From Cycas panzhihuaensis (taxonomy: Eukaryota > Plantae > Cycadophyta): a stretch of DNA of 64,000 nucleotides. This document shows, piece by piece, positions 41,401 through 64,000 of this stretch; within the stretch, counting starts at the first letter, position 1, and each line of letters begins with the position of its first letter. Made by a program: the position numbers and the translations under genes. The notes under the pieces were generated by a model. The model was not told the DNA's origin, made no database searches, and was given only the letters and a program-made list of their open reading frames with translations. The stretch covers positions 120,907,741 to 120,971,740 of the forward strand of contig CM041465.1 of the NCBI GenBank assembly GCA_023213395.1, read 5' to 3'.

Positions 41401-42619
41401 ACCAGTCATGACCTGGCAAAAAATCGGCAAACCTACATTATGACCTACGTTTCGACTACGATTGGATGATCAACATGGCGTACAACCACTAAGCATGATG
41501 CGGGCATAGAAAGTTTATACTAGAAACCAGGAATTCATGGCTGATTTTGTCGTTATTTCCATGATTAACGAAACACTTCCACCATATGAAGTACTTTTGG
41601 GATGACCTTGGTTATGAACTGCGCGTGTACTCCAAAATTGAGATTGCAACACATTAATGATTAAGCAAAAAGGAAAAAAATAATTAATAAATTTGAATCA
41701 TCATATTATAAGCAAAGAATTAGTAGATTTTAGCTCTTCGGATGAGGACAATAGTAATATTGATGAGGATGAATGTACTGAAAATGCGAAAGAGGATCAA
41801 CATCCTCCGAGTATAATATTTGATGACGATAATACATGTGAACCAATTTAAGGTGTTTTGTATTTAGATCCGTGTTCTAAGGATGAGATAGAATCAACTA
41901 GTGGGTTGTTTCATTGGTAGCAACAAGAATATGAACTATTTTCATGTTATTTAGTTGAAATAGAACCGCTAGACCACATAAATGCTTACTAAATCCAAGA
42001 TATATATGAGGATTATGAGCACAAATATCCTAACCATTTTTATGAAGTAATCAAAGGAAACCAAACATTACTTCAAAATTCGGCACATAATTTTAATAAG
42101 GATCAAATTTTCTATGAGGAAACATCGCAACAATCAATAAATCTAGGCATTGAACAAAACAAGCAAATAAAAAGCATGTGAAACATGTGGGATCTGATGT
42201 TGGTAGCAACAATGACAAAGATTTTCTTGCATTATAAGGATGTTTTTGCCTGGACATACAAAGATTTAAAGGGAATACCAAGAGAATTATGCGAGCATAA
42301 GATTGAACTAATATTAGGGTCAAAACCAGTAAAACATTGGCCATATTGAATGAATCCCAAATACACAAAACAAGTAGACATAGAAATCAGAAAAATGTTG
42401 GATGCGAGAATTGTATTTAAAGTTGATACAAGTGACTAGGTTTTGCTAATTGTAGTAGTGCCCAAGAAAAATAGAAAATTCTGCATTTGTGTTGATTTTT
42501 GAAAATTGAATGTAGTAACCTTTAAAGACCCGTTTTCCATTACGTTTATTGACACCATATTGGAAGAAGTTGTGAGACATGAAGTATACTCATTTTTGGA
42601 TGGATTTTCAGGCTACAAT

Positions 42620-45600
42620 TGTTAAACCTTATGTTTACATGTTAAGTATGTACTTTATTCTTTTATTCTTTCATTCGTTATTTTGTACTTTATGGGGTGA
42701 CTAATCACTTAAGTGATAAAGTGTACACCCACTTTCATCCTAGTGACATGACATTGTAACTAAAGGGTCAAATGGACCCTTATGTATTTTTGCTCACTTG
42801 AGAGCCTAATGGACACATGTCTCTCATGCATGACATGCAAGCCATGCATTGCATGTACCTTGGATGTTTGCCACTTGGCAAACATCTAACGGTGTTAGGT
42901 AACCTCAGTTACTCTATATATTGAGACCTTTCCTTATGTCTCATATGTAGAGTTGATGTGTAATGTTATGCTACGATTTTGCTAATCAATTGGTATTCTT
43001 TGGAGTAGGACTAATTCCTCCTCCTCACATCTTGGTATCATCTTGCTTCCTTGATCTTGTTTATCTTAGTTTTTGCTCTTATGTCATTTAGAACTAGAGG
43101 TGAACTATCTTCAAGATCTTGGCTTTGTAGGTCTTAGGCATTCTAATCCTTTGGCCTATTTTTACATTTGGTATCAGAGCAAGAGGAGACTAGTTCCCTC
43201 TGTTATGATTTCTTCTTCAAGGAAGACTTAAAGTGGGTTTTACAAGCCCTTGGTGATGACCTTCGCTCTCCGAAGGCAATCCAAGGATTGTTTAAGCTCA
43301 CCACTACAAGACCAAGACTTTGCTGGAGTATTTTTAAAGGCTGGAGTTCACTATACTCAGATCTGAATTTTTTTTTTCAGACCTTCTTCAAGGGTTTTGA
43401 GCAAGTTTACTCACGGTTTCTCATGTTTTTTTCATTAAAAATTGGTTTTTTCAGCTGGTTCTTCTTGCAGATCAGGGTGCTGGTGTATTATGAAGAATTT
43501 TGAAGCTCACTGACAGATATTATCACAAGCCTCTGACTCCCTGCAGGCTGTGAAGTGGTTCTGGGCATTTTCAGCCCTCAAACCCCAATTGGAGAGTACA
43601 AAATTGCTCATGCACACTTGCTGGACTGTTCTGCTCTCCTGAAAATGTTTGCGCACCTCTTACTAGGCCCCATGGACAGTTCACAAAGAAGAAACGAGCA
43701 CTAAACAGTGTTGTACGGCTGTTTCATCTTCTTTATACTATGCGCCCATTTTTTTTTTCACACGGTCTGTTCTCTTTCCACAAGCAACGTAATCTGCTCA
43801 AAATTGGACTGTACCTCCCTCTAGGGTATGCGACGCTACTCTCCAAATTTCGTCTCGATCCGCTGAGTATTCGCGGAGATACAAGCACTTGTGTGTTATG
43901 GAAATCCGCCCGAGCCGCCGTCACGTTGTTTTTTCGATTTTTTTGAAAAATTTCAAAGCACTTTAATCTTCTAAACTTTAGTTTATACTTTTAAGAATAT
44001 TCCTTTGAATATTCTTACTTTGATAAACTTATTTATTCTGAAGTTTTATTAAGTCACTTTTAAAACATTGAAAAAAATCACTTTTAAAGCCAAATTCAAG
44101 GTTTTTTTAGTGACTTTTCAGTTTTTTTGACTTCACTAATTTCACTTTTGTGTCAAAAGACTAAATCAAGTACTCTCAGTGATTTTTGACATTGAAAAGT
44201 GAAACTTTTTCCTTCATTAAGCTATTTTTTATTCAAGGCACCTTGCATGGTGACCATTAGCTTAAGTTTTTTAAGGAAAAAAAATCATCTTTTTTCACTT
44301 TTGAAGTCAAAAAAATCTTCTTTGATACATAGTGAGTTCATTAAATGGCTGATGCTAAGTCATTTTCTTATCATTGAAGATTAAAAATACTTGTTTTAAA
44401 GTGCTTATTAAAGCTCTCTGCGTGGTGTCCTTGTTGCTCAAAGTTTCAAAAAAAAAAAAAAAATTCAGCCTTTGTTTTTTGATATTCCAAGCACTTATTT
44501 GTTGTTGTACAAGTGATAAAAGGCCTTGTTATAGTGATTTTAAAGTGTTAATATTTTGTCGAAGTGACCAACCGACCGTACGGTCAATGCACGACAATTA
44601 AGATTGCTTGAGGGAAAGGAGGTTCAAAAAGGGTGTTATTGAGGCTGTGAATTCCAAGGAAAGCATGGTTTGTCTATGTTGATCAACCCTACCTGCCTTG
44701 TCCTAGATTTGGCTTAGTCAACTGTTGGATTTCCTTTATAGATCGGGGTTGGACCAACTCTTTTGCCTAGTCGTCCACCCCTCATCACTCCATTCAGTTG
44801 TTGGATCTTCTAGTAAGATCAAGATTGTTGGTTTTGTTAGAAGGTGGAACTTAAGCGACGAAAGCATTGAGTTTCCAAGTCATCTGCTAGCTTCAAGCCT
44901 TCTACAGCTTAAACATGGCTGCTCTAAATATGCTCAATGCATGCACAATTAAGTTGATAAGACAAGAGAATTATTAAGATTGGAAGAGGCAAAACACAAA
45001 ACCTCTTAAAGATGAATGAACTTTGGGGCTATGTCCTATGCCTGTACCTATGGAAGTTGATGGTGTGGTTGATGATCCTGATCCTGAATATGTTGCTTCT
45101 TGGGAAGCCAATGATGAAATAGCCTTGGCTTTTTTGCATATGGTTATTGATGTAAATGTTGATCAAAATATTGCAAATGCTGAAACTTCTAAGGAAGCTT
45201 GGGACACTTTGTCCTCCTTGTATGAAAGACGAGATGAAGCTCGTATTTTGTTTGTCAAAGCAAAATTTTATTCAATAAAGTATGTAAAGCCTATGTCGGC
45301 ATTTCTTGCTTCCATTAAAGAAATTTGTAATGAATTGAATACTTTAGTCAAACCTGCCTCAAGAGATGAACTTGTCACCACTACTCTTCGAGCCTTGCCT
45401 AAAGATTTCAATGGCTTCATTTCATCTATCACTTGAGATGGCTCACTTTCTACAATGACCTTCAATCAATTAGAGAGTTTGTTATTTCAAGAGGAGCAAA
45501 TCTATGACAAAGAAAATGATAATGGTGCATCAACTTCAGGAGCTTTCATAGCCAAATTGAAGGCCAAACAAACTCCCAAACCTTCACTTACAAAACAGTT

Positions 45601-48600
45601 TGGGAATATGAACATTGGCACTTCAAAAGCCAATGTTATTTGTCATTATTATGGCAAGGTTGGCCACATTGCTCCTGATTGTCAAAAGAAGAAAGTTGAT
45701 CTTGGTACGTACAACAACAAATGACCACATCGAGACAACAACAGCCTCGTCAGCAATTCCAATAGTAGTAGTAGTTTCAACAACAACAACAACAATATCC
45801 CCCTCGATCAAATCGAGGTGCATATCGAGGAGGTCAAAGAGGAAGGGGGGCTTTTAGAGGTGGTAATTAAACCACACAAATCCGTTCGCAGAAGAGAATA
45901 AGCTACTTTGTGCTTATCACACTTCAAACGTTGATCAAACTTGGATCATTAATTCGGGGGCATCATGACACATGACTGGAAGTGAAAAATTTCTTCAAGA
46001 CATCAAAGAAGGAAATGGTAAATCAGTAACTTTTGGCAACAATGAATCAGTGGAAATCTCTAGTATAGGCAAAGTTGCTTCATTTCATTCTTCTTCAAAT
46101 CCTTTTTTAACATTTCCCAATGGTGATGCCTACTACATTCCTTCCATGGAGAAGAACTTGCTATCTGTTAGCCAATTGGACAAGCAATAGATGATCATCT
46201 TGTTTAAAAATGGAAAATGTGTTATTAGTGACAAGCATGATCAGATTGTAGCCATTGGTCATGAAGATCATGGTCTTTATAAGTTGGATGCAAATAACAT
46301 AACTTCTGATTCTTCTTACTTTGTCACGTCATCATCAATAAAGATGCAACTTTGGCATCATCGTCTAGGCCACTTAAGTTTAGACAATGTCAAGTTGATG
46401 GTAAACAAGAACATGGTGCATGGACTTCCCAAGCTATATGGTTCTAAATGCCTTTGTGAAGCTTGTATAATGGGGACGCAACATAGATTGCCTTTTCCTA
46501 AAGGCAAAGCATGGCGTGCATCATATCCTTTGCAGCTGATACATTTCGATTTATGTGGATCTATGTCCACAACATCTTTTGGGGGTGCATTGTACTATAT
46601 CTCCTTCATTGATGATTTCTCTCACAAAGTTTGGGTTTACTTCCTCAAATAGAAATCTGAAGCATTCCAGAAGTTCAAGGAATTCAAACTTGAAGTAGAG
46701 AATGAATCTGGCTATACAATCAAAACACTAAGGTCAAATAATGGAGGTGAATTCGCTTCAAACGAATTCACTCAATTCTGCAAGGATAATGGCATTCGAA
46801 GACAACTCACTACTCCTTATACTCCTCAACAAAACATAGTCTCTGAACGTATGAATAGGACTTTGGCAAACAAAGCCAAAGCAATGATGCATGTAAAAGG
46901 ACTCACACGAGCATATTGGGCAGAAGCATTTCACACAGCTGCTTATGTGGCAAATCAGAGTCCTACTTCTGCAGTCGCCGACATCACACCAGAAGAAGCC
47001 TGGTCTGGTAAAAAGCCAACTGTCAGTCACTTAAGGACATTTGGGTGTACTACATACATGCACATCCCCGATCAACAAAGATCTAAGTTAGACAAACATA
47101 GTCTAAAATGCATCTTTGTAGGCTATGCCATTCATAGTAAAGCTTACAAGTTGTATGATCCCATTGGAAAGAAAATGCATCTCTCAAGAGATGTAATCTT
47201 TGTTGAAGAAGAGCCTAAGGAGTTAGAAATTGCATTCTTCCAACCTCCTCTTGATAAAGGTAAGAAGATTGTTGAGTACTTCATTTCCTCTCAATCTTCC
47301 ACATCATGTACACCATCTGCACCAGCTGAACCGTCTACATCAGTAGATACAACTCTACTTGATCCTAGCACATCGTCTTTTGATCCATCATTTAGACCAG
47401 AAGACATTGAGGTTCAAGTCACATCAGTTAAAAAATTGCCAAAATGGTTTACTTCAACTGTTCAAGACGGTCAAACTATTGAAGGAAAGCATCCATCAAA
47501 ATATAGGCAACAAACCAATTATGCACTCATGGCTAATGTACTTTGTGTTGATGAGCCCTCCACCTTTGAGGAGGCATCTCAAAAGGCTAATTGGAAAATT
47601 GCTATGGATGAAGAAATCCATTCTATTGAAAAGAATGGAACATGGGATTTGGTAGAATTGCCTAAGCATAAACAGGCAATCAGTTGCAAATGGGTCTACA
47701 AGACCAAATTCCATTATAATGGTACACTCAAGCACCATAAGGTGCGACTTGTTGCAAAAGGGTTCAAACAAAAAGAAGGCATTAACTATGAGGAGACTTT
47801 TGCGCCTGTTGCTAATATGAATACCATCAAACTCATCTTGGCTTTAGCTGCTCAATGTAAATGGTCTGCATATCAGATGAACGTGAAGAGCGTCTTTCTC
47901 AATGGCGATCTTCAAGAGGAGGTATATTTGGAACAACCTCCTGGTTACAAAGCACAAGGCAAGGAGCACTTGGTTTATTGTCTGAAAAAGGCTTTATATG
48001 ACTTGAAACAAGCTCCTCAGGCATGGTACTCCAAAATCGATGATTATTTTTTGAGACATGGTTTTCATCGATCCACATCAGACCCCAACTTGTACATCAA
48101 AGTTGAGAAAGACCATGCCATTTTTATTGTCTTGTATGTTGATGGCTTAGTGATAACTGGTAATGATACTAAGATGATACACATTCTCCAGGATGATTTG
48201 AATAGAACCTTCGAGATGACAGATCTTGGACTACTACATTATTTTCTAGGCTTTGAGGTGTGGCAACAGCCTGGATCTATCTTCATATCCCAAGCAAAAT
48301 ATTCTTGGGACATTTTGCAGTGGTTTAGGATGCATGATTGCAAACCAGCATTAACACCTATGGAGAATGGAACAAAGCTTACTCTTAATGAGGAAGCTGA
48401 ACCTGCAGATCCCACTCTTTACCGGCAGTTGATTGGTAGCCTCATTTATCTCACCAACACTCGATCGGATATTTCATTTGCAGTTGGGATTTGTTTTCGA
48501 TACATGTCTCAACCCAATCAGAAACATTAGAATGCAGCAAAATGCACACTCAAATACATCAAAGGAACATTGCAGCATGGTCTTCAATATGCACATAATG

Positions 48601-49644
48601 AGGACTTTGTCTTGGAAGGGTTCTCAGATTCTGATTGGGTTGGTTGTCAAGATAGCCGAAGATCCACCTCGGGTTACAGCTTTACTCTTGGTTCAGGAGC
48701 TGTTTCGTGGAGTTGCAAGAAGCAACCCAATGATACCTTGTCCTCCACTAAAGCAGAATACAAAGCTACTATCAGCGCAGCTTGTGAGGCTATCTGGCTA
48801 TGATGGATTCTTGGGGAGCTTGGACTTGAGCAAAATCACCCCATCAGGATATACTGTGACAATCAAAGTGTACTCAAGTTAGCCAAGAATCCAATTTTTC
48901 ATGCACGGACCAAACACATCGAGGTTCATCATCACTTCATCAGAGAGCATGGGCAGAATGGTGAGATCAACCTCCAGTACAGACTTATAGAGGAGCAGAT
49001 AGTAGATATCTTTACCAAGTCTCTTGGTAGAGAAAAGTTTGTAAAATTTAGACATGGTCTTGGCGTCCGACTTAACATTGTAAACAGTAAGGGGGGGTGT
49101 TAAACTTTATGTTGACATGTTAAGTATGTACTTTATTCTTTTATTCTTTCATTCATTATTTTGTACTTTATGGGGTGACTAATCACTTAAGTGATAAAGT
49201 GCACACCCACTTTCATCCTAGTGACACGACATTGTAACTAAAGGGTCAAATAGACCCTTATGCATTTTTGCTTACTTGAGAGCCTAATGGACACATGTCT
49301 CTCATGCATGACATGCAAGCCATGCATTGCATGTACCTTGGATGTTTGCCACTTGGCAAACATCTAACGGTGTTAGGTAACCTCAGTTACTCTATATATT
49401 GAGACCTCTCCTTATGTCTCATATGTAGAGTTGATGTGTAATGTTATGCTACGATTTTGCTAATCAATTGGTATTCTTTGGAGTAGGACTAATTCCTCCT
49501 CCTCACATCTTGGTATCATCTTGCTTCCTTGATTTTGTTTATCTTAGTTTTTGCTCTTATGTCATTTAGAACTAGAGGTCAACTATCTTCAAGATCTTGG
49601 CTTTGTAGGTCTTAGGCATTCTAATCCTTTGGCCTATTTTCACA
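42620..49644 (+). mobile_element. Full-length Ty1/Copia element (young, non-functional)
   Basis: 547-bp LTRs 42620-43166 and 49098-49644, about 12 mismatches by eye. Perfect TSD ACAAT. PBS TGGTATCAGAGC 43169-43180. PPT aaggggggg 49089-49097. Confidence 0.98.
44915..49090 (+). pseudogene. Copia gag-pol polyprotein with premature stops
   Basis: Domain order Gag, zinc knuckle (CHYYGKVGHIAPDC), PR (WIINSGAS), LWHHRLGH, INT, RT (YVDG instead of YVDD), RH (GFSDSDW). Fragmented into several ORFs. Confidence 0.95.
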
Positions 49645-51780
49645 ACAATCAGATAAGCATTCTAGAAAAGGATAAATTAAAAACCATATTTGTCACACAA
49701 ACTGGAATTTTTGCATACAATCGAATGCCTTTTGGACTTGCAATGCCCCTATTACATTTCAGCGAATCATTATGCATATATTTAATCAATTATCATCAAA
49801 ATCAGTAAAAGTATTCTTAAACGGCTGGTCCATTTATGGTAACATTAAAGATCACCTTCCACTATTGACAGAATGTTTGGAAGATTGTCGAAAGACAAAA
49901 TTATCACTAAATCCAGAAAAATACCAATTCTTAGTTCCATATGGCAAGCTATTGGGACATATTGTGTGTGCTCGTGGGTTGAAACTGATCCAGATAAATC
50001 AAAGTCATAATGAATCTAATGCCACCATCAAATAGTGTAGAAGTACTAGTCTTCCTTGGACACATACAATACTACCGTCGGTTTATAAAGGGATTTGCCC
50101 ACATTGCGCATCCCTTAGAAGAATTGTTACAAAAAGGGGTAAGTTTTACTTAGGGAAATGAACAACAAACAACCTTTGCAGATCTCAAAAATAGACTTAT
50201 TATAGCCCCAAATTTAGGTCACCCAGAATGGACAAAAGAATTCAATATTCACGTAGACACATCACATATAATAATTGGATGTACATTAGCCCAAGAATGT
50301 AGTCACAAGTTTGACTTACCATCTACTTTGTCAATAGACAATTGAATAGAGCAGAAAAGAACTACTCAACAACCGAAAGAGAAGCATTAGGAATGATTTA
50401 TGCTTTGCAGAAATTTTGACATTATCTCTTAGCAAATCGTTTTGTATTTTTTGTGGACCATCGAGCCCTTTTATACGTGATCAACGAACTTATCATCCAA
50501 GGAAGAATAAACCGATGGTTATTATTACTTCAAAAATTTAATTTTAAGGTAGTAGTTCGACGAGGTCGCACACATGTAGCTGTTGACCACTTATCCAGAA
50601 TTCAGACATGGGAAGAACCTCATGGAGTTAATGATGATTTTCCCGATGCTAAACTATTCCAAGTGATAGCAACTCCACCAAGTTATGATGATATAATGAG
50701 ATACTTAAGCTTAAGATTATTTCCTATAGATATGCCTTCACAACAACGTAGAGATCTTGTGAAAAAAGCAGCACCTTATCAACTAATAGGTGGATTTCTA
50801 TACAAGCTGGGAAAAGATCATGTGTTACGACGATGTGTAATGCTAGAAGAAGTGCCAACAATACTCAATGAAGCTCATAAGGGTACTACTAGTGGTCATG
50901 TCGGACCCAAATCTACAGCGAGGAAGATTTTATTATTAGGATTATGGTGGCCACAATTATTTAAGGATATAAAACAGTATGTCTTTAGATGTGATATTTG
51001 TTAAAGAATGGGTTGACCCTTGGAGCATGATTTTATGCCCTTACAACCATCTTTAGCTCAAGGAGTTTTTGAATGATGGGGATTAGATTTTGTGAGACCT
51101 TTTAAACATGTTACACAACTAACACAGGCTAAATATATTTTAGTTGTAATGGATTACCTCGTGAAGTGGGTTGAAGCAAAAGCACTTCGAGATAATTCCG
51201 CGCGAAGCACAACCATATTCCTATATGAGAATATTATTACCAGATTTGGGTGTCCATTAGAAATTGTTAGCAACAGAGGAACACATTTTATAAATGACAC
51301 AATCCATTGTTTAAAACATGAATTCATGATTTCACATCATAAGTCGACACCCTATTAATCCACGAGCTAATGGACAAGCGAAATCAAACAATAAAATAAT
51401 AGTAACAATGCTAACCAAATTGTATAATGCTAACAAAGATGATTGGGCAGAACAATTACACTCAACTCTATGGGCCTTCAGGATGACATACAAGACTACT
51501 ACCGATCACACTCCATTTCAGTTAGTCTATGGTGCAGAAGTAGTTCTTCCTATAGAGTTTATAGTCCCAAGCTTAAGAATTGTTGTGCAACAACGATGGC
51601 CGAATTCAACTAGTATTCAAGCTCGACCAACAAATATTTTAGCATTGGATGAAACTTGACAACATGCGCAATGGGTGATGAACACAATACAACAACGAAG
51701 AAAAAAATGGCATGATAAAACACTGCATCCAAAAGTATTTAAGGAAGGGGACCTAGTACTTAAGTATGATGGCAAGTATT

Positions 51781-52060
51781 TTATAAAATCATGTTAGCTT
51801 AAAATTTGATGGTCCAATCCATTCGTGGTAAAAAGAATTGTTTAAAATGGCACAATGAAGATAGCACATATTGATGATGACAAATAAATATTTACGACCA
51901 ATGGAAAACACTAACCTATTTTATAAAATCATGTCAGCTTAAAATTTGATGGCCTAGTCCATTCGTGGTAAAAAGAATTTTTTAAAATGGCACAATGAAG
52001 ATAGCACATATTGATGATGACAAATAAATATTTACGACCAATGGAAAACACTGACCTATT
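51781..52060. repeat. 140-bp tandem duplication at the Gypsy integrase C-terminus
   Basis: ttataaaatcatg...atggaaaacact(a/g)acctatt at 51781 and 51921. Confidence 0.93.
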
Positions 52061-54301: not shown

Positions 54302-54857
<556 letters not shown>

Positions 54858-57368: not shown

Positions 57369-60300
57369 TGTTGAAAGTGCCAAAGGCCTATGAAACCCAA
57401 GATCTAGAAGATAGATTCTCTCTAGTTCTAGAAAGCAAGAGATCTAGACTAATAATGAAAATAAGATTAACATGAGCAAGATCAAAGCACAAAGAGAGAG
57501 CAAATGATACCAAATGGGAGGAGATGGAATTGGTCCAATCTCCAAATGAATATCAGTTTGATTAGCAAACTGACAGCATAGCAATACAACTCCAACTCTA
57601 TATGAGAAACATGAGAAGAGGTCTCAATATATAGAGTGACAGAAGAGACCTAAGGCATTGGATGTTTGACAAGTGTCAAACATCCGAGGTACATGCCTTG
57701 CATGTAGGACATGTGTCCTTTTGGGCTCTCAAATGAGCAAAAGTGCATCAGGGTCCATTTGACCCTTAAGTGACAATATTGTGTCATTAGGAAAGAATGG
57801 GGGTGTGCACTTTATTACTTAAGTGATAAGTCACTCCATAAAGTACAAAAGTACAAATAATACATGCAAATAAAGTACATAAGATTAACATGTAAACATA
57901 AGGTTTTAACACCCCCCCTTACTGTTTACAATGTTAAGTCGAACCCCTAGACCATTTCTAAATTTTACAATTTTTTCTCTACCAAGTGGCTTGGTAAAGA
58001 TATTTGCTGTCTGCTGCTCTATAGGTCTATACTGAAGGTTGATCTCATTGTTCTGCACATGCTCTCTGATGAAGTGATGATGAACCTCAATATGTTTGGT
58101 CCTTGCATGAAAAATAGGATTCTTGGCCAACTTGAGCACACTTTGATTATCGCAATATATCCTGGTGGGGTGATCTTGCTCAAGTTCAAGCTCCCCAAGA
58201 ATCTGTCGTAGCCAGATAGCTTCACAAGTTGTGCTGACTGTAGCTTTGTATTTTGCTTTGGTGGAGGACAAGGTAACATTGGGTTGCTTCTTACAACTCC
58301 ATGAAACAACTCCTAAACCAAGGGTAAAACAGTAGAGGTTGATCTTCTGCTATCCTGGCAACCTGCCTAATCAGAATTTGAGAACCCTTCCAGAGTGAAG
58401 TTCTCATCATGTGCATACTGATGGCCATGCTGCAATGTGCCTTTGATGTATTTGAGTATGCATTTGGCTGCATTCCAATGCTTCTGATTGGGTTGAGACA
58501 TGTATCTGGAGCAAATCGCAACTGCAAATGAGATATCTGGGCGAGTGTTGGTGAGATAGATGAGGCTACCAATCAACTGTCGGTAAAGAGTGGAATTTGC
58601 TAGTTCAGCTTCTTCATTGAGAGTAGGCTTTGTTCCATTCTCCATGGGTGTAGGCGTTGGTTTGCAGTCATCCATCTTGAATCACTCCAAAATGTTCGAA
58701 GAATATTTGGCTTGGGAGATGAAGATATAGCCAGGTTGTTACAATATCTCAAAGCCTAAAAAATAATGCAGAAGTCCAAGATCTGTTATCTCGAAACTTC
58801 TCTTCAAATCATCTTAGAGAATCTGTACTATCTTAGTGTCATTACCAGTGATCACTAAGTCATCAACATACAAGACAATAAAGATAGCATGGTCTTTTCC
58901 GACTTTGATGTACAAGTTAGGATCTGAAGTAGATCGATGATACCCATGTCTCAAAAAATAATCATCAATCTCTGAGTACCATACTCTTGGAGCTTGCTTC
59001 AAATCATATAACGCCTTTTTTAAGCGACAAACCAAGTGCTCCTTGCTTTGTACTTTGTAACCAGGAGGTTGCTCCAAGTATACCTCCTCTTGAAGATCGC
59101 CATTGAGAAAGGCACTCTTCATGTCCATTTGATAAACCGGCAATTTGCATTGAGCTGTTAAGGCCAAGATGAGTCTGATGGTGTTCATATTGGCAATAGG
59201 TGTAAAAGTCTCCTCATAATCTATGCCTTCTTTTTGTTTGAAGTCTTTTGCAACAAGGCGGGCCTTCTGGTGCTTAAGTGTACCATCATAATGGAATTTG
59301 GTCTTGTAGACCCATTTTTAATTGATTGTCTGTTTGTGTTTAGGCAATTCAACCAAATCCCAAGTTCCATTCTTTTCAATAGAATGGATTTCTTTATCCA
59401 TGGCAACCTTCTAATTTTCATTTTTAGAAGCCTCCTCAAAAGTGGAAGGCTCATCAACACAAAGCACTTCAGCCATAAGTGCATAATTGGTTTGCTACCT
59501 ATATTTTGATAGACGTTTTCCTTCAATAATCTAGCAATCTTGGACAGGCTGAGTATACCATTTGGGCAGCTTTTTGACTGATGTAACTTGAACCTCAAGA
59601 TCTTCCGATCTAAGTGGTTGATCAATAGAAGATGTACTAGGATCAAGTGGAGCCAATTTTGATGATGTAGATGGACCAGTAGGTGTAGATGATGTGCATG
59701 GTGTTGAAGATTGAGAGGGAAGAAAAGCTTCAACAATCTTTTTGCCTTTATCAAGAGGAGGTTGGATGGATGTTGATTCCAACCCTTTATGTTCATTTTC
59801 AACAAAGATTACATCTCTTGAGAGATGCATTTTCTTCCCAATAGGATCATACGGCTTGTAAGCTTTGCTATGAATGGTGTAGCTTGCAAAAATACATTTT
59901 AGACTATGTTTGTCTAACTTAGATCTTTGCTGATCAGGGATGTGCATGTATGCAGTACATCCAAATGTCCTCAAATGGCTAACGGTTGGCTTTTTCCCAG
60001 ATCAAGTCTCATTTGTTGTGATGTTGGTGACTGCTGAAGTAGGACTCTGATTTGCCACATAGGCAGTTGTGTGGAATGCTTCTGCCCAGTAAGCTCAAGT
60101 GAGTCCCTTTGCATGCATCATTGCTTTGGCTTTATTTGTCAAAGTTTTGTTCATTTGTTTAGAGGCTCCGTTTTGTTGAGGAGTATGAGGAATGGTGAGT
60201 TGTCTCTGAATGCTGTTATCCTTGCAGAATTGGGTGAATTCCTTTGAAGTGAATTCACCTCCATTGTCTGACCTTAGAATTTTGATTGAATGGCCAGACT

Positions 60301-63300
60301 TGTTCTCCACTTCAAGCTTGAATTCTTTAAACTTTTGGAATGCTTCAGACTTGTATTTGATGAAGTAAACCCAGACTTTGTGGGAGACATCGTCAATGAA
60401 AGAGATGTAATACAAAGCTCCTCCAATGGATGCAGTGGACATAGGTCCACATAAATCTGAATGTATCAACTGCAAAGGATACGATGCATGCCAAGTTTTA
60501 CCTTTAGGGAAAGGCAATCGAGGTTATGTTCCCATTATACATGCTTCACAAAGACATTTTAAACCATACAACTTTGGAAGCCCATGCACCATATTCTTGT
60601 TTATCATCTGCTTGATATTGTCTAAGCTCAAGTGGCCTAGACATTGATGCCAAAGTTGCATCTTGGACAAAGATTGAGTGACAAGTATTATATTATTAGC
60701 ATCCAACTCGTAAAGGCCATGATCCTCATGTCCAATAGCCACCACCTGATCATCCTTGTCACTTATTACACATTTCCCATTTTTGAACAAAATGTTGGTC
60801 TCTTGCTTGTCCAATTGGCTAACAGATAGCAAACTCTTCTCCATGGAAGGTATAAGGTAGGCATCTCCATTGGGAAATGTGGATGAAGGATTGGAAGGAG
60901 AATGAAATGAGGCAAATGTGCTTGTGCTAGAAATCTTAATTGGCTTATTGTTGCTGAAGGTCACTGATTGACCCTTTCGTTCCTTGATGTCACAAAGGAG
61001 TTCTTCACTCCCAGTCATGTTTTGAGTTGCCCCTAAGTCAATGATCCAAGTTTGATCAATCTTGGAGGTATGATAAGCACAAAATAGCTTATCCTCATCT
61101 ACAAATTGATTAAAGTGGCGTTGATTGCCACCTCTAAACCCCCCCCTTCGACTTTGATTTTCTCGATATGCACCTCGATTTGGTCGAGGGGTTTGTTGTT
61201 GCTATTGTGGGAACTGTTGAGATGATTGCTGCTGTCTCTGATGCTATTGATGTGGCTGTTGTTGTTGTCGTGTGTGCTGGAGATCAGCCTGTTTCTTTCT
61301 ATAATAAGGAGTTATGTGGCCCACTTTGCCACAATAATGATAGATGACATTGGTCTTTGAGGAACCAATGTTTATGTTCCCAAACTGCTTTGAGAGTGAT
61401 GGTTTGGGATTTTTCTTAGCCTTCAATTTGGCCATGAATGCTCCTAAAGTGGATGGCTCATCAACATCTTCCTTGATATAAATCTATTCCTTTTGAAGTA
61501 ATAAACTTTCAAGTTGATTAAAAGACGTACTTCAAAGTGAACCATCTCTCGTAGTGGATGATATAAATCCATTATAGTCTTTAGCCAATGCTTTAACAAT
61601 TGTCGTTACAAGCTCGTCCCTGGAAGCAGGTTTACCTAATGTATTCAATTCATTACATATCTTCTTGATAGAGGAAAAGAAAATCGACGTAGCCTTGACA
61701 AATTTCAAAGAATACAGTTTGGTTTTTCCCATCAAAATGCGAGTTTCATTTCGCCTTTACAAAGAAGATAGAATATCCCATGCTTCCTTAGAAGTTTTTG
61801 CACATACAATATTTTGATCAACATGAACATCAATGATCATACGTAAAAATGCTAAAGCAATTTCATCTTTGGCTTCCCAAGCAGCAACACAAGCAGGATT
61901 AGGATGAACAATAACACCATTATTTTCAAAATGTGTAGGTTGCGGTATTTTGCTAGAAACATAACCCCAAAATTCATTTATTATTAAGAGGTTTTATGTT
62001 ATCCTCTTCCATTCTTGATACTTATTTTGTCCTATTAGTCTGATGGTACATGCATTAAGCATATTTATAGCAGCCATGTTGAAGTTGTAAGGCTTGAAGT
62101 TAGCAGATGACTTGAAAACTCAAAGCTTTCGTCGCTTAAGTTCCACCTTCTAACAAACCAACAGTCCTGATCTTACTAGAAGATCCAACAACTGAATGGA
62201 GTGATGAGGGGTGGAGGACTAGGCAAAGGAGTTGGTCCAACCCTGATCTATAGAAGAGATCCAACAGTTGGCCAAGTCAAATCTAGGACAAGGCAGGTAG
62301 GGTTGATCTGCATGGACGTACCATGGTTTCCACAGGATTCATTTCCCAATAACACCCTTTTTGAACCTCCTTTCCCTCAAGCAACCTTAATTGTCGTGCA
62401 CTGACGTACAGTCAGTTGGTCCCTTAAGGAATGCACCAAGCTTAAGGTTATTTTAGAGGCAAGATTTAAACCTTTTTCGGGCCTCTCCAACAAGATTTCA
62501 AAGTCACTTTTTAGAAGATTAAAGTGGACTTAGGATTTATTTTACTTGCATGATGTACTTATGAAAGATTCTTGATTAATCTTATAATGAAAGGCTTCTA
62601 AAGAAGCAATCTAGTACATCAAATGAGCACTTAGAAGTGTTGTTGCAAGAGCACTTAATGAAGTGAAATAGTGCTACACAAATCCAAGTAAAAATATGCT
62701 TGAGCACAATGATTTTTGAGAATGTAAGCACTTTCCATGAAATGTGAGGTTCAAACCTCTAAAGATTTGTAAAGAGGTAATCTTTCGACAAAAAGCGAGG
62801 AAGACCCAGCTTTCTGTTAAACGAGATTGATCGAACTTGTGATTCATTAGATCTTTCTAATAAGTGTCGGCTAAATAGATCAGGTAAATAAGTCTCGACT
62901 GTTTAGCGATTTGATAATCAAATTCATTCTTGAAGAAATTATGACTATGAGTCAAATTTGATCCAAATTGAGAGATGTTTTTTTTCTGTTATTAGAAATT
63001 GAACTAGTAATTTTCTCTCTTTTCCAGAGATATCCATTTTGAAGGACGATCTGTTCAACTCTCTTCTTATAGGTGAATAAAACTTTCTTTTCCTCATAAA
63101 ATAGATCAATTTGTGTAGAAAATAGATGGATGTCCCTTATATCCATAGAGAAAAGCAAACCAGGCAAAGGATGATCCATCAGTTTTTGCAACTCGATCGC
63201 ATATGACGGATCCATTAAGAAGAGCAAAGCAAAGCCTTGTGATGAAAGTACAAGTGGGTTCCTTTTAATGCTCAAGATGAAGAGAAGAAGACCACTTGCA

Positions 63301-64000
63301 AAATGAAGACACCGAGCACCAAGTGTTGGAACTTCAAAATAGTCTCAACGATCAACAAATAAAGTGATTTTATTAAGTAAAAGTGTTCTTGAGCCCCTTT
63401 TTGTGACTAAGGGCAATAGGTCACCATGCAAGATGCCTTAGAAAAAGTGTTGAGATAGTGATAAATATCACTTTGACAAGGTATCAACACTTTAAAATCA
63501 CTTTAACAAGGCCTTTTAAAACTTGTACAACATGAAGTAAGTGTTAAATAAAGCTTGGAATGCCAAAAACAAAGGTTGAAAAGTTTTTTTTTTTTTTGAA
63601 ACTTTGAGCAACAAGGACACCATGCAGGGAGCCTTAATAAGCACTTTAAAACAAGTATTTTTAATCTTCAATGATGAGAAAATGACTTAGCATCAGCCAT
63701 TTAATGAACTCACTAAGTATCAAAGAAGATTTTTGACTTCAAAAGTGAAAAAAAGATGATTTTTTCCTTAAATAATTTAAGCTAAAGGTCATAATGCAAG
63801 GTGCCTTGAATAAAAAAAGCTTGAAAAAGGAAAACATTTCACTTTTTTAATGTGAAAAATCACAACAAAATACTTGACTTAGTCTTTTGACACTAAAGTG
63901 AGATTAATGATGTCAAAAAATTAAAAAATCGCTGAAGAAACCTTGAATTTGACTTAGAAAAAGTGATTTTCAGCAATTTAAAGTGACTTAATATAAAACT
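57369..64000 (-). mobile_element. Ty1/Copia element of the same family as 42620-49644; 5' end outside the window
   Basis: 3' LTR 57369-57911, homologous to the other Copia's LTRs. PPT 57912-57920. gag-pol from ATG 62077 to ~57910 (YVDD intact, several stops and frameshifts). Leader homologous to 44030-44915. Confidence 0.96.
62731..63220 (-). pseudogene. ycf2: Nuclear plastid DNA (NUPT): internal ycf2 fragment
   Basis: LMDPSYAIELQKLMDHP...NLDQI/(frameshift)LTHSHNFFKNEFDYQIAKQSRLIYLIYLADTY*KDLMNHKFDQSRLTESWVFLAFCRKITSLQ...FHGK aligns by eye, collinearly, with the Ycf2 segment just before the AAA Walker A region (angiosperm LMIPSSMIELRKLLD...LTHSDHLSKNDSGYQM...YLRYLVDIHKKHLMNYEF...LAERRIFLA...SHGK, recalled from memory). 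Confidence 0.88.

What the first reader, a model, noticed from the sequence alone, without database searches (positions are those of the whole stretch)
62420..63467. Plastid ycf2 fragment carried inside the 5' leader of a Copia retrotransposon
Seen: a ~490-bp segment (62731-63220) translating to Ycf2-like sequence sits between the PBS side and gag, in the same orientation as the element's transcript. It has one stop and one frameshift and retains more CpG than its flanks. One junction shares AAAG with the leader's recurrent AAAGTGCTT motif. The sister Copia (42620-49644) lacks the whole ~1.05-kb block 62420-63467: its leader jumps at ~44567 between AAG.GA microhomologies. It therefore cannot show whether the capture is copy-specific. 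Inference: either a NUPT patched into this copy by break repair, or plastid DNA/RNA captured and then amplified by a Copia sublineage, making the element a vector for organellar sequence.
Basis: partly seen in the sequence, partly recalled or inferred. Interest (0 to 1): 0.85.

Follow-up and report, generated by a model that had tools for sequence, protein, structure and literature searches.

The report
Decayed chloroplast ycf2 piece inside Copia
A 487-base, mutated piece of the chloroplast gene ycf2 really does sit in the untranslated leader of an old, broken Copia retrotransposon in what is probably a Cycas genome; it looks like an ordinary stray chloroplast-DNA insertion, and spread by the retrotransposon is neither shown nor ruled out.

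Summary
Window 62732-63218 (minus strand) is a plastid ycf2 fragment covering Cycas Ycf2 codons ~1511-1674. It lies in the sense orientation inside the long leader of a degenerate minus-strand Ty1/copia element.

- **Divergence:** it differs from plastome-depth contigs of related runs by about 24 substitutions and 3 indels (~5%). Most changes are C>T-type at CG/CHG sites. It carries one stop and two frameshifts, not one. The decay alone rules out an assembly chimera.
- **The 1.04-kb "block" is not one unit:** the ~300 bp and ~250 bp around the ycf2 piece are ordinary, highly repeated leader sequence of this Copia subfamily. Other leader copies in three runs join these two flanks directly, with ~28 other bases where ycf2 sits. 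The sister element lost the whole stretch between AAGTGA/AAGGGA microhomologies.
- **Copy number:** contigs carrying the window's own derived letters, transversions included, occur at about single-copy depth in other runs. The insertion is therefore real, old and at most a handful of copies. A second, more decayed ycf2 haplotype shares only hot-spot C>T changes and may be an independent insertion.
- **Not testable here:** no junction count and no LTR dating.

Best reading: an ordinary end-joined NUPT in a Copia leader (~0.65). Carriage by a small Copia sublineage remains possible (~0.25). Retrotransposon-linked NUPT proliferation has already been proposed in the literature.

The parts
62732..63218 (-). 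Plastid ycf2-derived segment (NUPT). It corresponds to Cycas Ycf2 codons ~1511-1674, just upstream of the AAA domain.
   Evidence: Plastome-depth contigs fit only here at ~95% identity (records 28-29 and the loose end at 63218). tblastn to Cycas Ycf2. phmmer hit to Ginkgo Ycf2.
62857..62859 (-). Premature stop: plastome CAG (Q) has become TAG.
   Evidence: plastome letter, table 3 (62859).
62970..62978 (-). First frameshift: one extra T in a T-run relative to the plastome.
   Evidence: table 4 (62978, left out 1, in the plastome-depth contigs of all four runs). Frame change -2 to -3.
63129..63130 (-). Second frameshift: a 2-bp deletion (the plastome has AT behind 63129).
   Evidence: table 4. 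Frame change -1 to -2.
62426..62731 (-). Leader segment native to this Copia subfamily (left flank of the NUPT on the + strand). Absent from the sister.
   Evidence: Thousands of repeat contigs at summed depth 1e3-1e5 (table 2). Joined directly to the right flank in other copies (table 5). No match in the sister.
63219..63467 (-). Leader segment native to this Copia subfamily (right flank of the NUPT). Absent from the sister.
   Evidence: tables 2, 5 and 5c.
63468..64000 (-). Upstream leader shared with the sister (85% to sister 44044-44567). It runs off the window; the PBS and 5' LTR are not in the window.
61978..62425 (-). Downstream leader shared with the sister (about 87% to sister 44562-45009), directly before gag.
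57912..61977 (-). Degenerate gag-pol of the carrier Copia: gag, gag_pre-integrs, rve, RVT_2. There are 9 in-frame stops in the 1.68 kb at 58478-60154.
57378..57911 (-). 3' LTR of the carrier Copia (about 78% to the sister LTR; lower end approximate).
42620..49644 (+). Sister Copia, a related subfamily (~82-85% identical). LTRs 42620-43166 and 49098-49644 are 97.8% identical. It has a tRNA-iMet-type PBS at ~43169-43181 and the TSD ACAAT. The leader deletion joint is at 44562-44567.

Best explanation
A fragment of plastid DNA, 487 bp from the middle of ycf2, entered the nucleus and was ligated by non-homologous or microhomology-mediated end joining into a double-strand break. The break lay in the long non-coding leader of a Ty1/copia element, in a host that is a cycad with a Cycas-type plastome. 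About 22-28 nt of leader were lost at the site. Since then the piece has decayed as silent, methylated nuclear DNA, with C>T changes concentrated at CG/CHG sites, one stop and two frameshifts. It has no function. It shares the transcript's orientation by chance (1 in 2). It is present at one to a few copies, whereas the insert-free leader form is extremely abundant. The surrounding extra leader blocks are ordinary family sequence that the sister lineage lost by a microhomology-flanked deletion.

Shown: the identity, the boundaries, the decay spectrum, the existence of insert-free leaders, and the presence of the same decayed insert in independent runs. Inferred: DNA-level end joining, the low copy number, and the age (roughly 5-25 Myr, depending on the rate assumed).
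For: - **Identity and limits:**
- **Divergence:** about 24 substitutions and 3 indels over 487 bp against plastome-depth contigs.
- **Spectrum:** 15 of the 20 listed substitutions are C>T-type. Of these, 13 fall on the 61 CG/CHG cytosines and 2 on the 115 CHH cytosines (p = 2e-5).
- **Against an RNA-editing origin:** 10 of the 15 are G>A on the sense strand, and one sense-strand C>T creates a stop.
- **Insert-free leaders:** joints 62733>63226 occur in X3, X4 and X7 with 28-29 other letters between. Joints 62695>63234 and 62712>63244 have 31-34 nt on each side (tables 5 and 5c).
- **Relative abundance:** flank depth sums are 1e3-1e5. Contigs carrying window letters inside the piece reach only 3.8-22 (59 at one place, 62947 in X3); none appears in the low-coverage run X7.
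- **Same insertion in independent data:** a 3.9-depth X1 contig carries all four window letters at 63013-63045, including two transversions.
- **Carrier age:** the carrier copy is equally decayed, with 9 stops in 1.68 kb of pol.
- **Other searches:** no protein with the junction ORF is in the 5.8-billion-cluster collection. No other ycf2 piece is in the window.
Against: - Junction-bearing copies could not be counted.
- A second nuclear ycf2 haplotype exists (X1 record 3, depth 3.8, and an X4 contig, depth 5.3). It shares 6 of 7 of the window's hot-site C>T changes in the parts it covers. This would also fit duplication after insertion.
- Some window-like depths in X3 and X4 (11-59) exceed my guess for single-copy depth.
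- NUPT divergence is about equal to the carrier's decay, so the piece could predate this copy.
Confidence: 0.65

Rival explanations
1. Transduction. The ycf2 piece was inserted into the leader of a still-active progenitor Copia. It was then copied with the element's RNA, so a small sublineage (a few copies) carries it with identical junctions. The window copy is one daughter.
For: - The piece lies inside the transcribed leader in the sense orientation.
- Its decay is no younger than that of the carrier copy.
- A second nuclear haplotype shares 6 of 7 hot-site changes with the window.
- Window-like depths reach 11-59 in X3 and X4.
- The leader of this family tolerates large indels (many 'skips').
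- First-stage notes report other plastid fragments near the PBS of LTR elements on the same chromosome (unchecked).
Against: - No junction-spanning second copy was seen.
- The second haplotype shares none of the window's three non-hot changes in the parts it covers (62907, 63115, the 63129 deletion). That pattern points to parallel CG/CHG decay of an independent NUPT.
- Single window-like letters can come from error bubbles of the 10,000-20,000x plastome.
- No window-like contig is found in the low-coverage run X7.
- The junction ORF has no relatives in the protein collection.
Confidence: 0.25
2. RNA-level capture. Reverse transcriptase switched template from Copia RNA to a ycf2 transcript and back during cDNA synthesis, so the piece entered through an RNA intermediate.
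For: The sense orientation and short microhomology at a junction are compatible. One sense-strand C>T is of the editing type: TCA>TTA, S>L, at 62771.
Against: - Plastid RNA is not in the compartment where virus-like particles assemble (established knowledge).
- Experimental plastid-to-nucleus transfers were DNA-mediated (review PMC12863932).
- The change at 62771 is absent from the only other low-depth (16.7) contig covering it, in X4, which may itself be a plastome-error contig.
- 10 of the 15 C>T-type changes are on the wrong strand for editing, and one makes a stop.
- No list of Cycas ycf2 editing sites was available.
Confidence: 0.04
3. Assembly chimera or plastome contamination joined to a repeat.
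For: None beyond the general risk in repeat-rich assemblies. No single listed contig spans the whole stretch.
Against: The piece is 5% diverged from the plastome with a nuclear decay spectrum and frame-breaking indels. Low-depth contigs in independent runs carry the same derived letters, including transversions.
Confidence: 0.01

Closest known systems
NUPTs (nuclear integrants of plastid DNA) co-localised with transposable elements
   Same: It is a plastid fragment inserted in nuclear repeat DNA with sharp ends and short microhomology. It shows C>T decay at methylated cytosines and has no coding capacity. Reviews report preferential NUPT overlap with retrotransposons (PMC7037861, PMC12863932).
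   Different: The host is a cycad, where I found no NUPT survey in the library. The position is inside the leader between PBS and gag, in the sense orientation. In this one piece, decay is stronger at CHG than at CG.
Proposed retrotransposon-mediated NUPT proliferation (papaya Y-region rps15 NUPT amplified 23 times next to Ty3/gypsy; Copaifera plastid rDNA NUPTs with Ty3/gypsy)
   Same: Plastid DNA is physically linked to an LTR retrotransposon, so copy-and-paste could multiply it (as cited in PMC7037861 and PMC12863932).
   Different: In those cases the NUPT lies beside the elements and is demonstrably multi-copy. Here it lies within the element's transcribed unit, but multi-copy status with shared junctions is not shown.
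Host gene-fragment capture by LTR retrotransposons (for example maize Bs1; from my own knowledge, not tested here)
   Same: Foreign sequence sits between the LTR/PBS side and gag, co-oriented with the element.
   Different: Those captures are of nuclear mRNAs through template switching and are found in several element copies. Here the source is organellar, the spectrum argues for DNA insertion, and only one locus is documented.

Membership tests
NUPT | Sequence derived from the plastid genome | tested here: met
   Plastome-depth contigs align to 62732-63218 at ~95%. tblastn to Cycas Ycf2 gives E ~1e-64. The only all-protein hit is Ginkgo Ycf2.
NUPT | Embedded in nuclear sequence on both sides | tested here: met
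   Both flanks are Copia leader, homologous to highly repeated nuclear contigs and partly to the sister element.
NUPT | Nuclear-type decay (C>T at methylated contexts, loss of reading frame) | tested here: met
   13 of 61 CG/CHG cytosines changed against 2 of 115 CHH (p = 2e-5). One stop and two frameshifts.
NUPT | End-joining junctions (microhomology, small target deletion, no target-site duplication) | tested here: inconclusive
   Insert-free paralogous leaders imply about 22-28 nt lost and a 2-nt overlap. The best-matching bridging contigs have only 20-22 nt on one side (tables 5 and 5c).
Ycf2 (Pfam PF05695) | The fragment itself scores on the Pfam Ycf2 model | tested here: not met
   No Pfam family at E <= 1 for the three ORF pieces. 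This part of Ycf2 is poorly conserved, and homology is shown by direct comparison with cycad and Ginkgo Ycf2 instead.
Ty1/copia LTR retrotransposon (carrier) | gag - integrase - RVT_2 order on one strand | tested here: met
   Retrotran_gag_2, gag_pre-integrs, rve and RVT_2 lie on the minus strand in that order.
Ty1/copia LTR retrotransposon (carrier) | Two LTRs, PBS and target-site duplication for this copy | not testable with these tools
   The 3' LTR is at ~57378-57911. The 5' LTR and PBS lie beyond base 64000. The sister has all of these features.
Retrotransposon-transduced (co-amplified) NUPT | Identical NUPT/leader junctions in two or more element copies at different loci | not testable with these tools
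   No access to the rest of the genome and only one read-laying run.
Retrotransposon-transduced (co-amplified) NUPT | Copies share post-insertion mutations of all classes | tested here: inconclusive
   The second haplotype shares 6 of 7 hot-site C>T changes but 0 of 3 non-hot changes (contexts).

The most novel reading that the evidence does not exclude
The ycf2 piece was acquired by an active Copia progenitor and has been copied by retrotransposition as part of the leader in a small sublineage shared by several Cycas species. That would be a base-resolved case of an LTR retrotransposon carrying organellar DNA inside its own transcription unit, in a gymnosperm.
Probability: 0.25. Interest if true: 0.5.

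Novelty: new member of a known kind. Interest (0 to 1): 0.25.

Why it matters
As it stands, this is one more decayed NUPT in repeat DNA. It is useful mainly as a clean, datable marker. The plastome gives the exact ancestral state, so the piece reads out the nuclear mutation spectrum of a cycad: here CHG decay is at least as strong as CG, and both far exceed CHH.

If the junctions turn out to be shared by several Copia copies, it would give direct sequence proof for something reviews so far only infer from proximity, namely that retrotransposons multiply NUPTs.

Tried and rejected
- **Pfam and PDB:** Pfam on the three ORF pieces and a PDB sequence search of the 107-aa ORF gave no Ycf2 hit. The adiponectin hit in PDB is weak, each matched stretch has a poor E-value (43), and I take it for chance.
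- **Junction ORF search:** The search for homologous proteins with the junction-spanning 107-aa ORF gave nothing. This is weak evidence, because repeat contigs are short.
- **Metagenome scan:** a search for the 24-nt left junction gave nothing, as expected for plant nuclear DNA.
- **Plastome DNA:** The plastome letters therefore come from read laying tables only, and 20 of the ~24 substitutions are individually listed.
- **Earlier findings:** The search of earlier findings by sequence was blank.
- **Leader structure:** Tandem Repeats Finder found no array in the leader.
- **Copy-number reading that I withdrew:** I first read the ~6,000 'million letters' of X1-X6 as raw data (0.5x), which made depth-4 contigs look multi-copy. 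The read share shows that this figure is the contig total. The runs are therefore deep, and depth 4-7 is about single copy.
- **Single shared letters:** I also rejected single shared letters as evidence of paralogs. A plastome at 10,000-20,000x yields error contigs at about this depth.
- **tblastn extensions:** extensions beyond 62732 and 63218 (to 62683 and 63323) are low-similarity gapped extensions, not plastid sequence.
- **Dating against the element:** LTR-LTR dating failed because the 5' LTR is outside the window.
- **RNA-editing test:** no Cycas ycf2 site list was found.
- **Handling of sequences:** Plastome letters were put into the ycf2 piece only in memory, to classify cytosine contexts and the codon changes; no restored sequence was printed, only 7-base contexts and single codons at the changed sites.
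Full report
**What is there.** The element holding the finding runs on the minus strand. ORFs with copia-type gag, gag_pre-integrs, integrase core and RVT_2 lie at 61735..58814 in that order. Its 3' LTR lies at about 57378-57911. Its leader extends from gag (~61977) past the window end, so the PBS and 5' LTR are not available.

The "sister" at 42620-49644 is a complete plus-strand Copia. Its 547-bp LTRs are 97.8% identical, it has a TGGTATCAGAGC-type PBS directly after the 5' LTR, and its TSD is ACAAT. The two elements are only 82-85% identical internally and ~78% in the LTR. They are related subfamilies, not close sisters.

**The ycf2 identification.** Pfam and PDB searches of the longest stop-free piece found nothing. 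An exhaustive phmmer search of 1.8 billion representatives returned a single hit (E 3e-5). That hit is Ginkgo biloba Ycf2, with Pfam Ycf2 at E 7.7e-294 plus an AAA domain.

Cycad Ycf2 proteins from the same cluster align by tblastn to 63218..62732. The alignment runs through three successive frames, to Cycas residues ~1511-1674, at ~80% identity and combined E ~1e-64. Cycas matches best, ahead of Dioon, Zamia and Ginkgo. The host is therefore most likely a cycad with a Cycas-type plastome; this is an inference.

**Comparison with real plastomes.** I laid Logan contigs of four public runs on 61900-64000. Contigs of organelle depth (515-20,000x) match only 62732-63218. In run X7, a 2735-nt contig covers 62732-63071 with 17 differences and 1 gap. 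A 1169-nt contig covers 63073-63218 with 7 differences and 2 gaps. Beyond 63218 these contigs continue for more than 170 nt in sequence unlike the window. Read on the minus strand, that sequence translates as the residues just upstream in Cycas Ycf2.

Divergence is thus about 24 substitutions plus 3 indels in 487 bp (4.9%). Substituting the listed plastome letters restores exactly the Cycas amino acids at every changed codon.

**Lesions and spectrum.**
- One stop: CAG>TAG at 62857-62859.
- One extra T at 62978.
- A 2-bp deletion at 63129.

Of the 20 individually listed substitutions, 15 are C>T-type. Thirteen of these fall on the 61 CG/CHG cytosines and 2 on the 115 CHH cytosines (p = 2e-5). 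By context, CHG lost 10 of 35 and CG lost 3 of 26. CpG observed/expected is still 0.82, against 0.09-0.27 in the flanks and 0.27 in the element's coding part.

This is the signature of methylated nuclear DNA. It excludes a chimeric assembly or plastome contamination.

**The 1.04-kb block is not the inserted unit.** The sister lacks 62426-63467. Its joint (44562-44567) lies between AAGTGA and AAGGGA, the two border sequences in the carrier copy.

The parts of the block outside the ycf2 core are ordinary repeat. They are covered by thousands of nuclear contigs, with summed depths of 1e3-1e5 (table 2).

Several contigs join the two flanks without ycf2:
- 62733>63226 in X3, X4 and X7, with 28-29 other letters between;
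- 62695>63234 (depth 46.6, 31 nt on the shorter side);
- 62712>63244 (34 nt on the shorter side) (tables 5, 5c).

The family's normal leader therefore contains both flanks next to each other. The plastid piece replaced roughly 22-28 nt, with about 2 nt (CT) of overlap at the 62732 end. The sister lineage separately deleted the whole region. Insert-free leaders read ...AAGCACT|GAAAAG there, and the motif is only modestly enriched.

**Copy-specific or amplified?** This could not be settled.

The runs X1-X6 are deep. Their ~6 Gb is the contig total, so unique sequence sits at a depth of roughly 4-7; this is an inference. Within the ycf2 core, contigs carrying the window's derived letters have depth 3.8-22 (59 at one place, 62947 in X3). 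None appears in the low-coverage run X7.

One X1 contig (depth 3.9) has all four window letters at 63013-63045, including two transversions. The same insertion therefore exists in independent data, at about single-copy depth.

A second haplotype is genuinely different, with 11 differences in 114 nt. It appears as X1 record 3 and as an X4 contig of depth 5.3. It shares 6 of 7 of the window's CG/CHG C>T changes in the parts it covers. It shares none of the three other changes (62907, 63115, the 63129 deletion). That pattern fits parallel hot-spot decay of an independent, older ycf2 NUPT at least as well as it fits duplication after insertion.

Single shared letters are not counted. A plastome at 10,000-20,000x produces error contigs at just this depth.

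The carrier's pol has 9 in-frame stops in 1.68 kb. That is comparable to 3 lesions in 0.49 kb of the NUPT, so the two are of similar age and relative dating is uninformative.

**RNA or DNA intermediate.** Ten of the 15 C>T-type changes are G>A on the sense strand, which editing cannot produce. One sense-strand C>T makes a stop. The one editing-like change (S>L at 62771) is absent from the only other low-depth contig that covers it, in X4. No Cycas ycf2 editing-site list was found. A recent review reports that experimental plastid-to-nucleus transfers carried unspliced, unedited DNA (PMC12863932).

**Comparison with what is known.** NUPTs are known to overlap preferentially with retrotransposons. 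Retrotransposon-mediated proliferation has been proposed for the papaya rps15 NUPT and for Copaifera (PMC7037861 and PMC12863932). This case is a new instance in a cycad. Its neat feature is a position inside the transcribed leader in the sense orientation. Without evidence of spread it is an ordinary NUPT.

**Age.** The JC distance is 0.051. All change is assigned to the nuclear copy. The distance is inflated by hot sites. It gives about 7 Myr at 7e-9 and about 23 Myr at 2.2e-9 substitutions per site per year. The rates are from my own knowledge, so the age is a rough inference.

**Verdict.** My odds are: ordinary end-joined NUPT ~0.65, small-scale carriage by Copia ~0.25, RNA capture ~0.04, artefact ~0.01, and the remainder for something not considered here.

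Noticed in passing
window 43167-45022 and 61978-64000: This Copia family has an unusually long non-coding leader: ~1.85 kb in the sister and more than 2.9 kb in the carrier copy. It has no ORF over ~110 aa. Its structure is highly variable, with many different 'skip' joints among copies in four Cycas-type runs.
   Followed up: partly
window 62113-62467: The leader stretch just upstream of gag reaches summed contig depths of 3-8 x 1e5 in all four runs. That is far above the rest of the element, so this segment is shared by an enormous number of repeats in these genomes.
   Followed up: no
window 62732-63218: With the plastome as the known ancestor, CHG cytosines decayed more (10 of 35) than CG (3 of 26), and both far more than CHH (2 of 115). 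The CG-versus-CHG difference is not significant (p = 0.13), but it hints at strong CHG-methylation-driven mutation in this cycad.
   Followed up: partly
runs X1 and X4, laid on window 62810-62923 and 63112-63129: A second, more decayed nuclear ycf2 haplotype of the same region exists at low depth in two species labels (11 differences in 114 nt from the window). It is either an independent NUPT or an old duplicate.
   Followed up: partly
window 42615-42619 and 49645-49649: The sister Copia is a complete insertion with the 5-bp target-site duplication ACAAT and 97.8% identical LTRs. It still holds a 559-aa open frame covering the SH3-like domain and RVT_2.
   Followed up: partly
window 51777-52056 and 54317-54857: Two short direct-repeat pairs (140-nt units adjacent; 239-nt units 302 nt apart) lie in the neighbouring Gypsy-like region.
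   Followed up: no
same chromosome, other windows (first-stage notes s1-819479, s1-824992, s1-822722): Other unchecked notes describe plastid fragments inside LTR elements, two of them close to the PBS. If these are real, plastid DNA in LTR-element leaders may recur in this genome.
   Followed up: no
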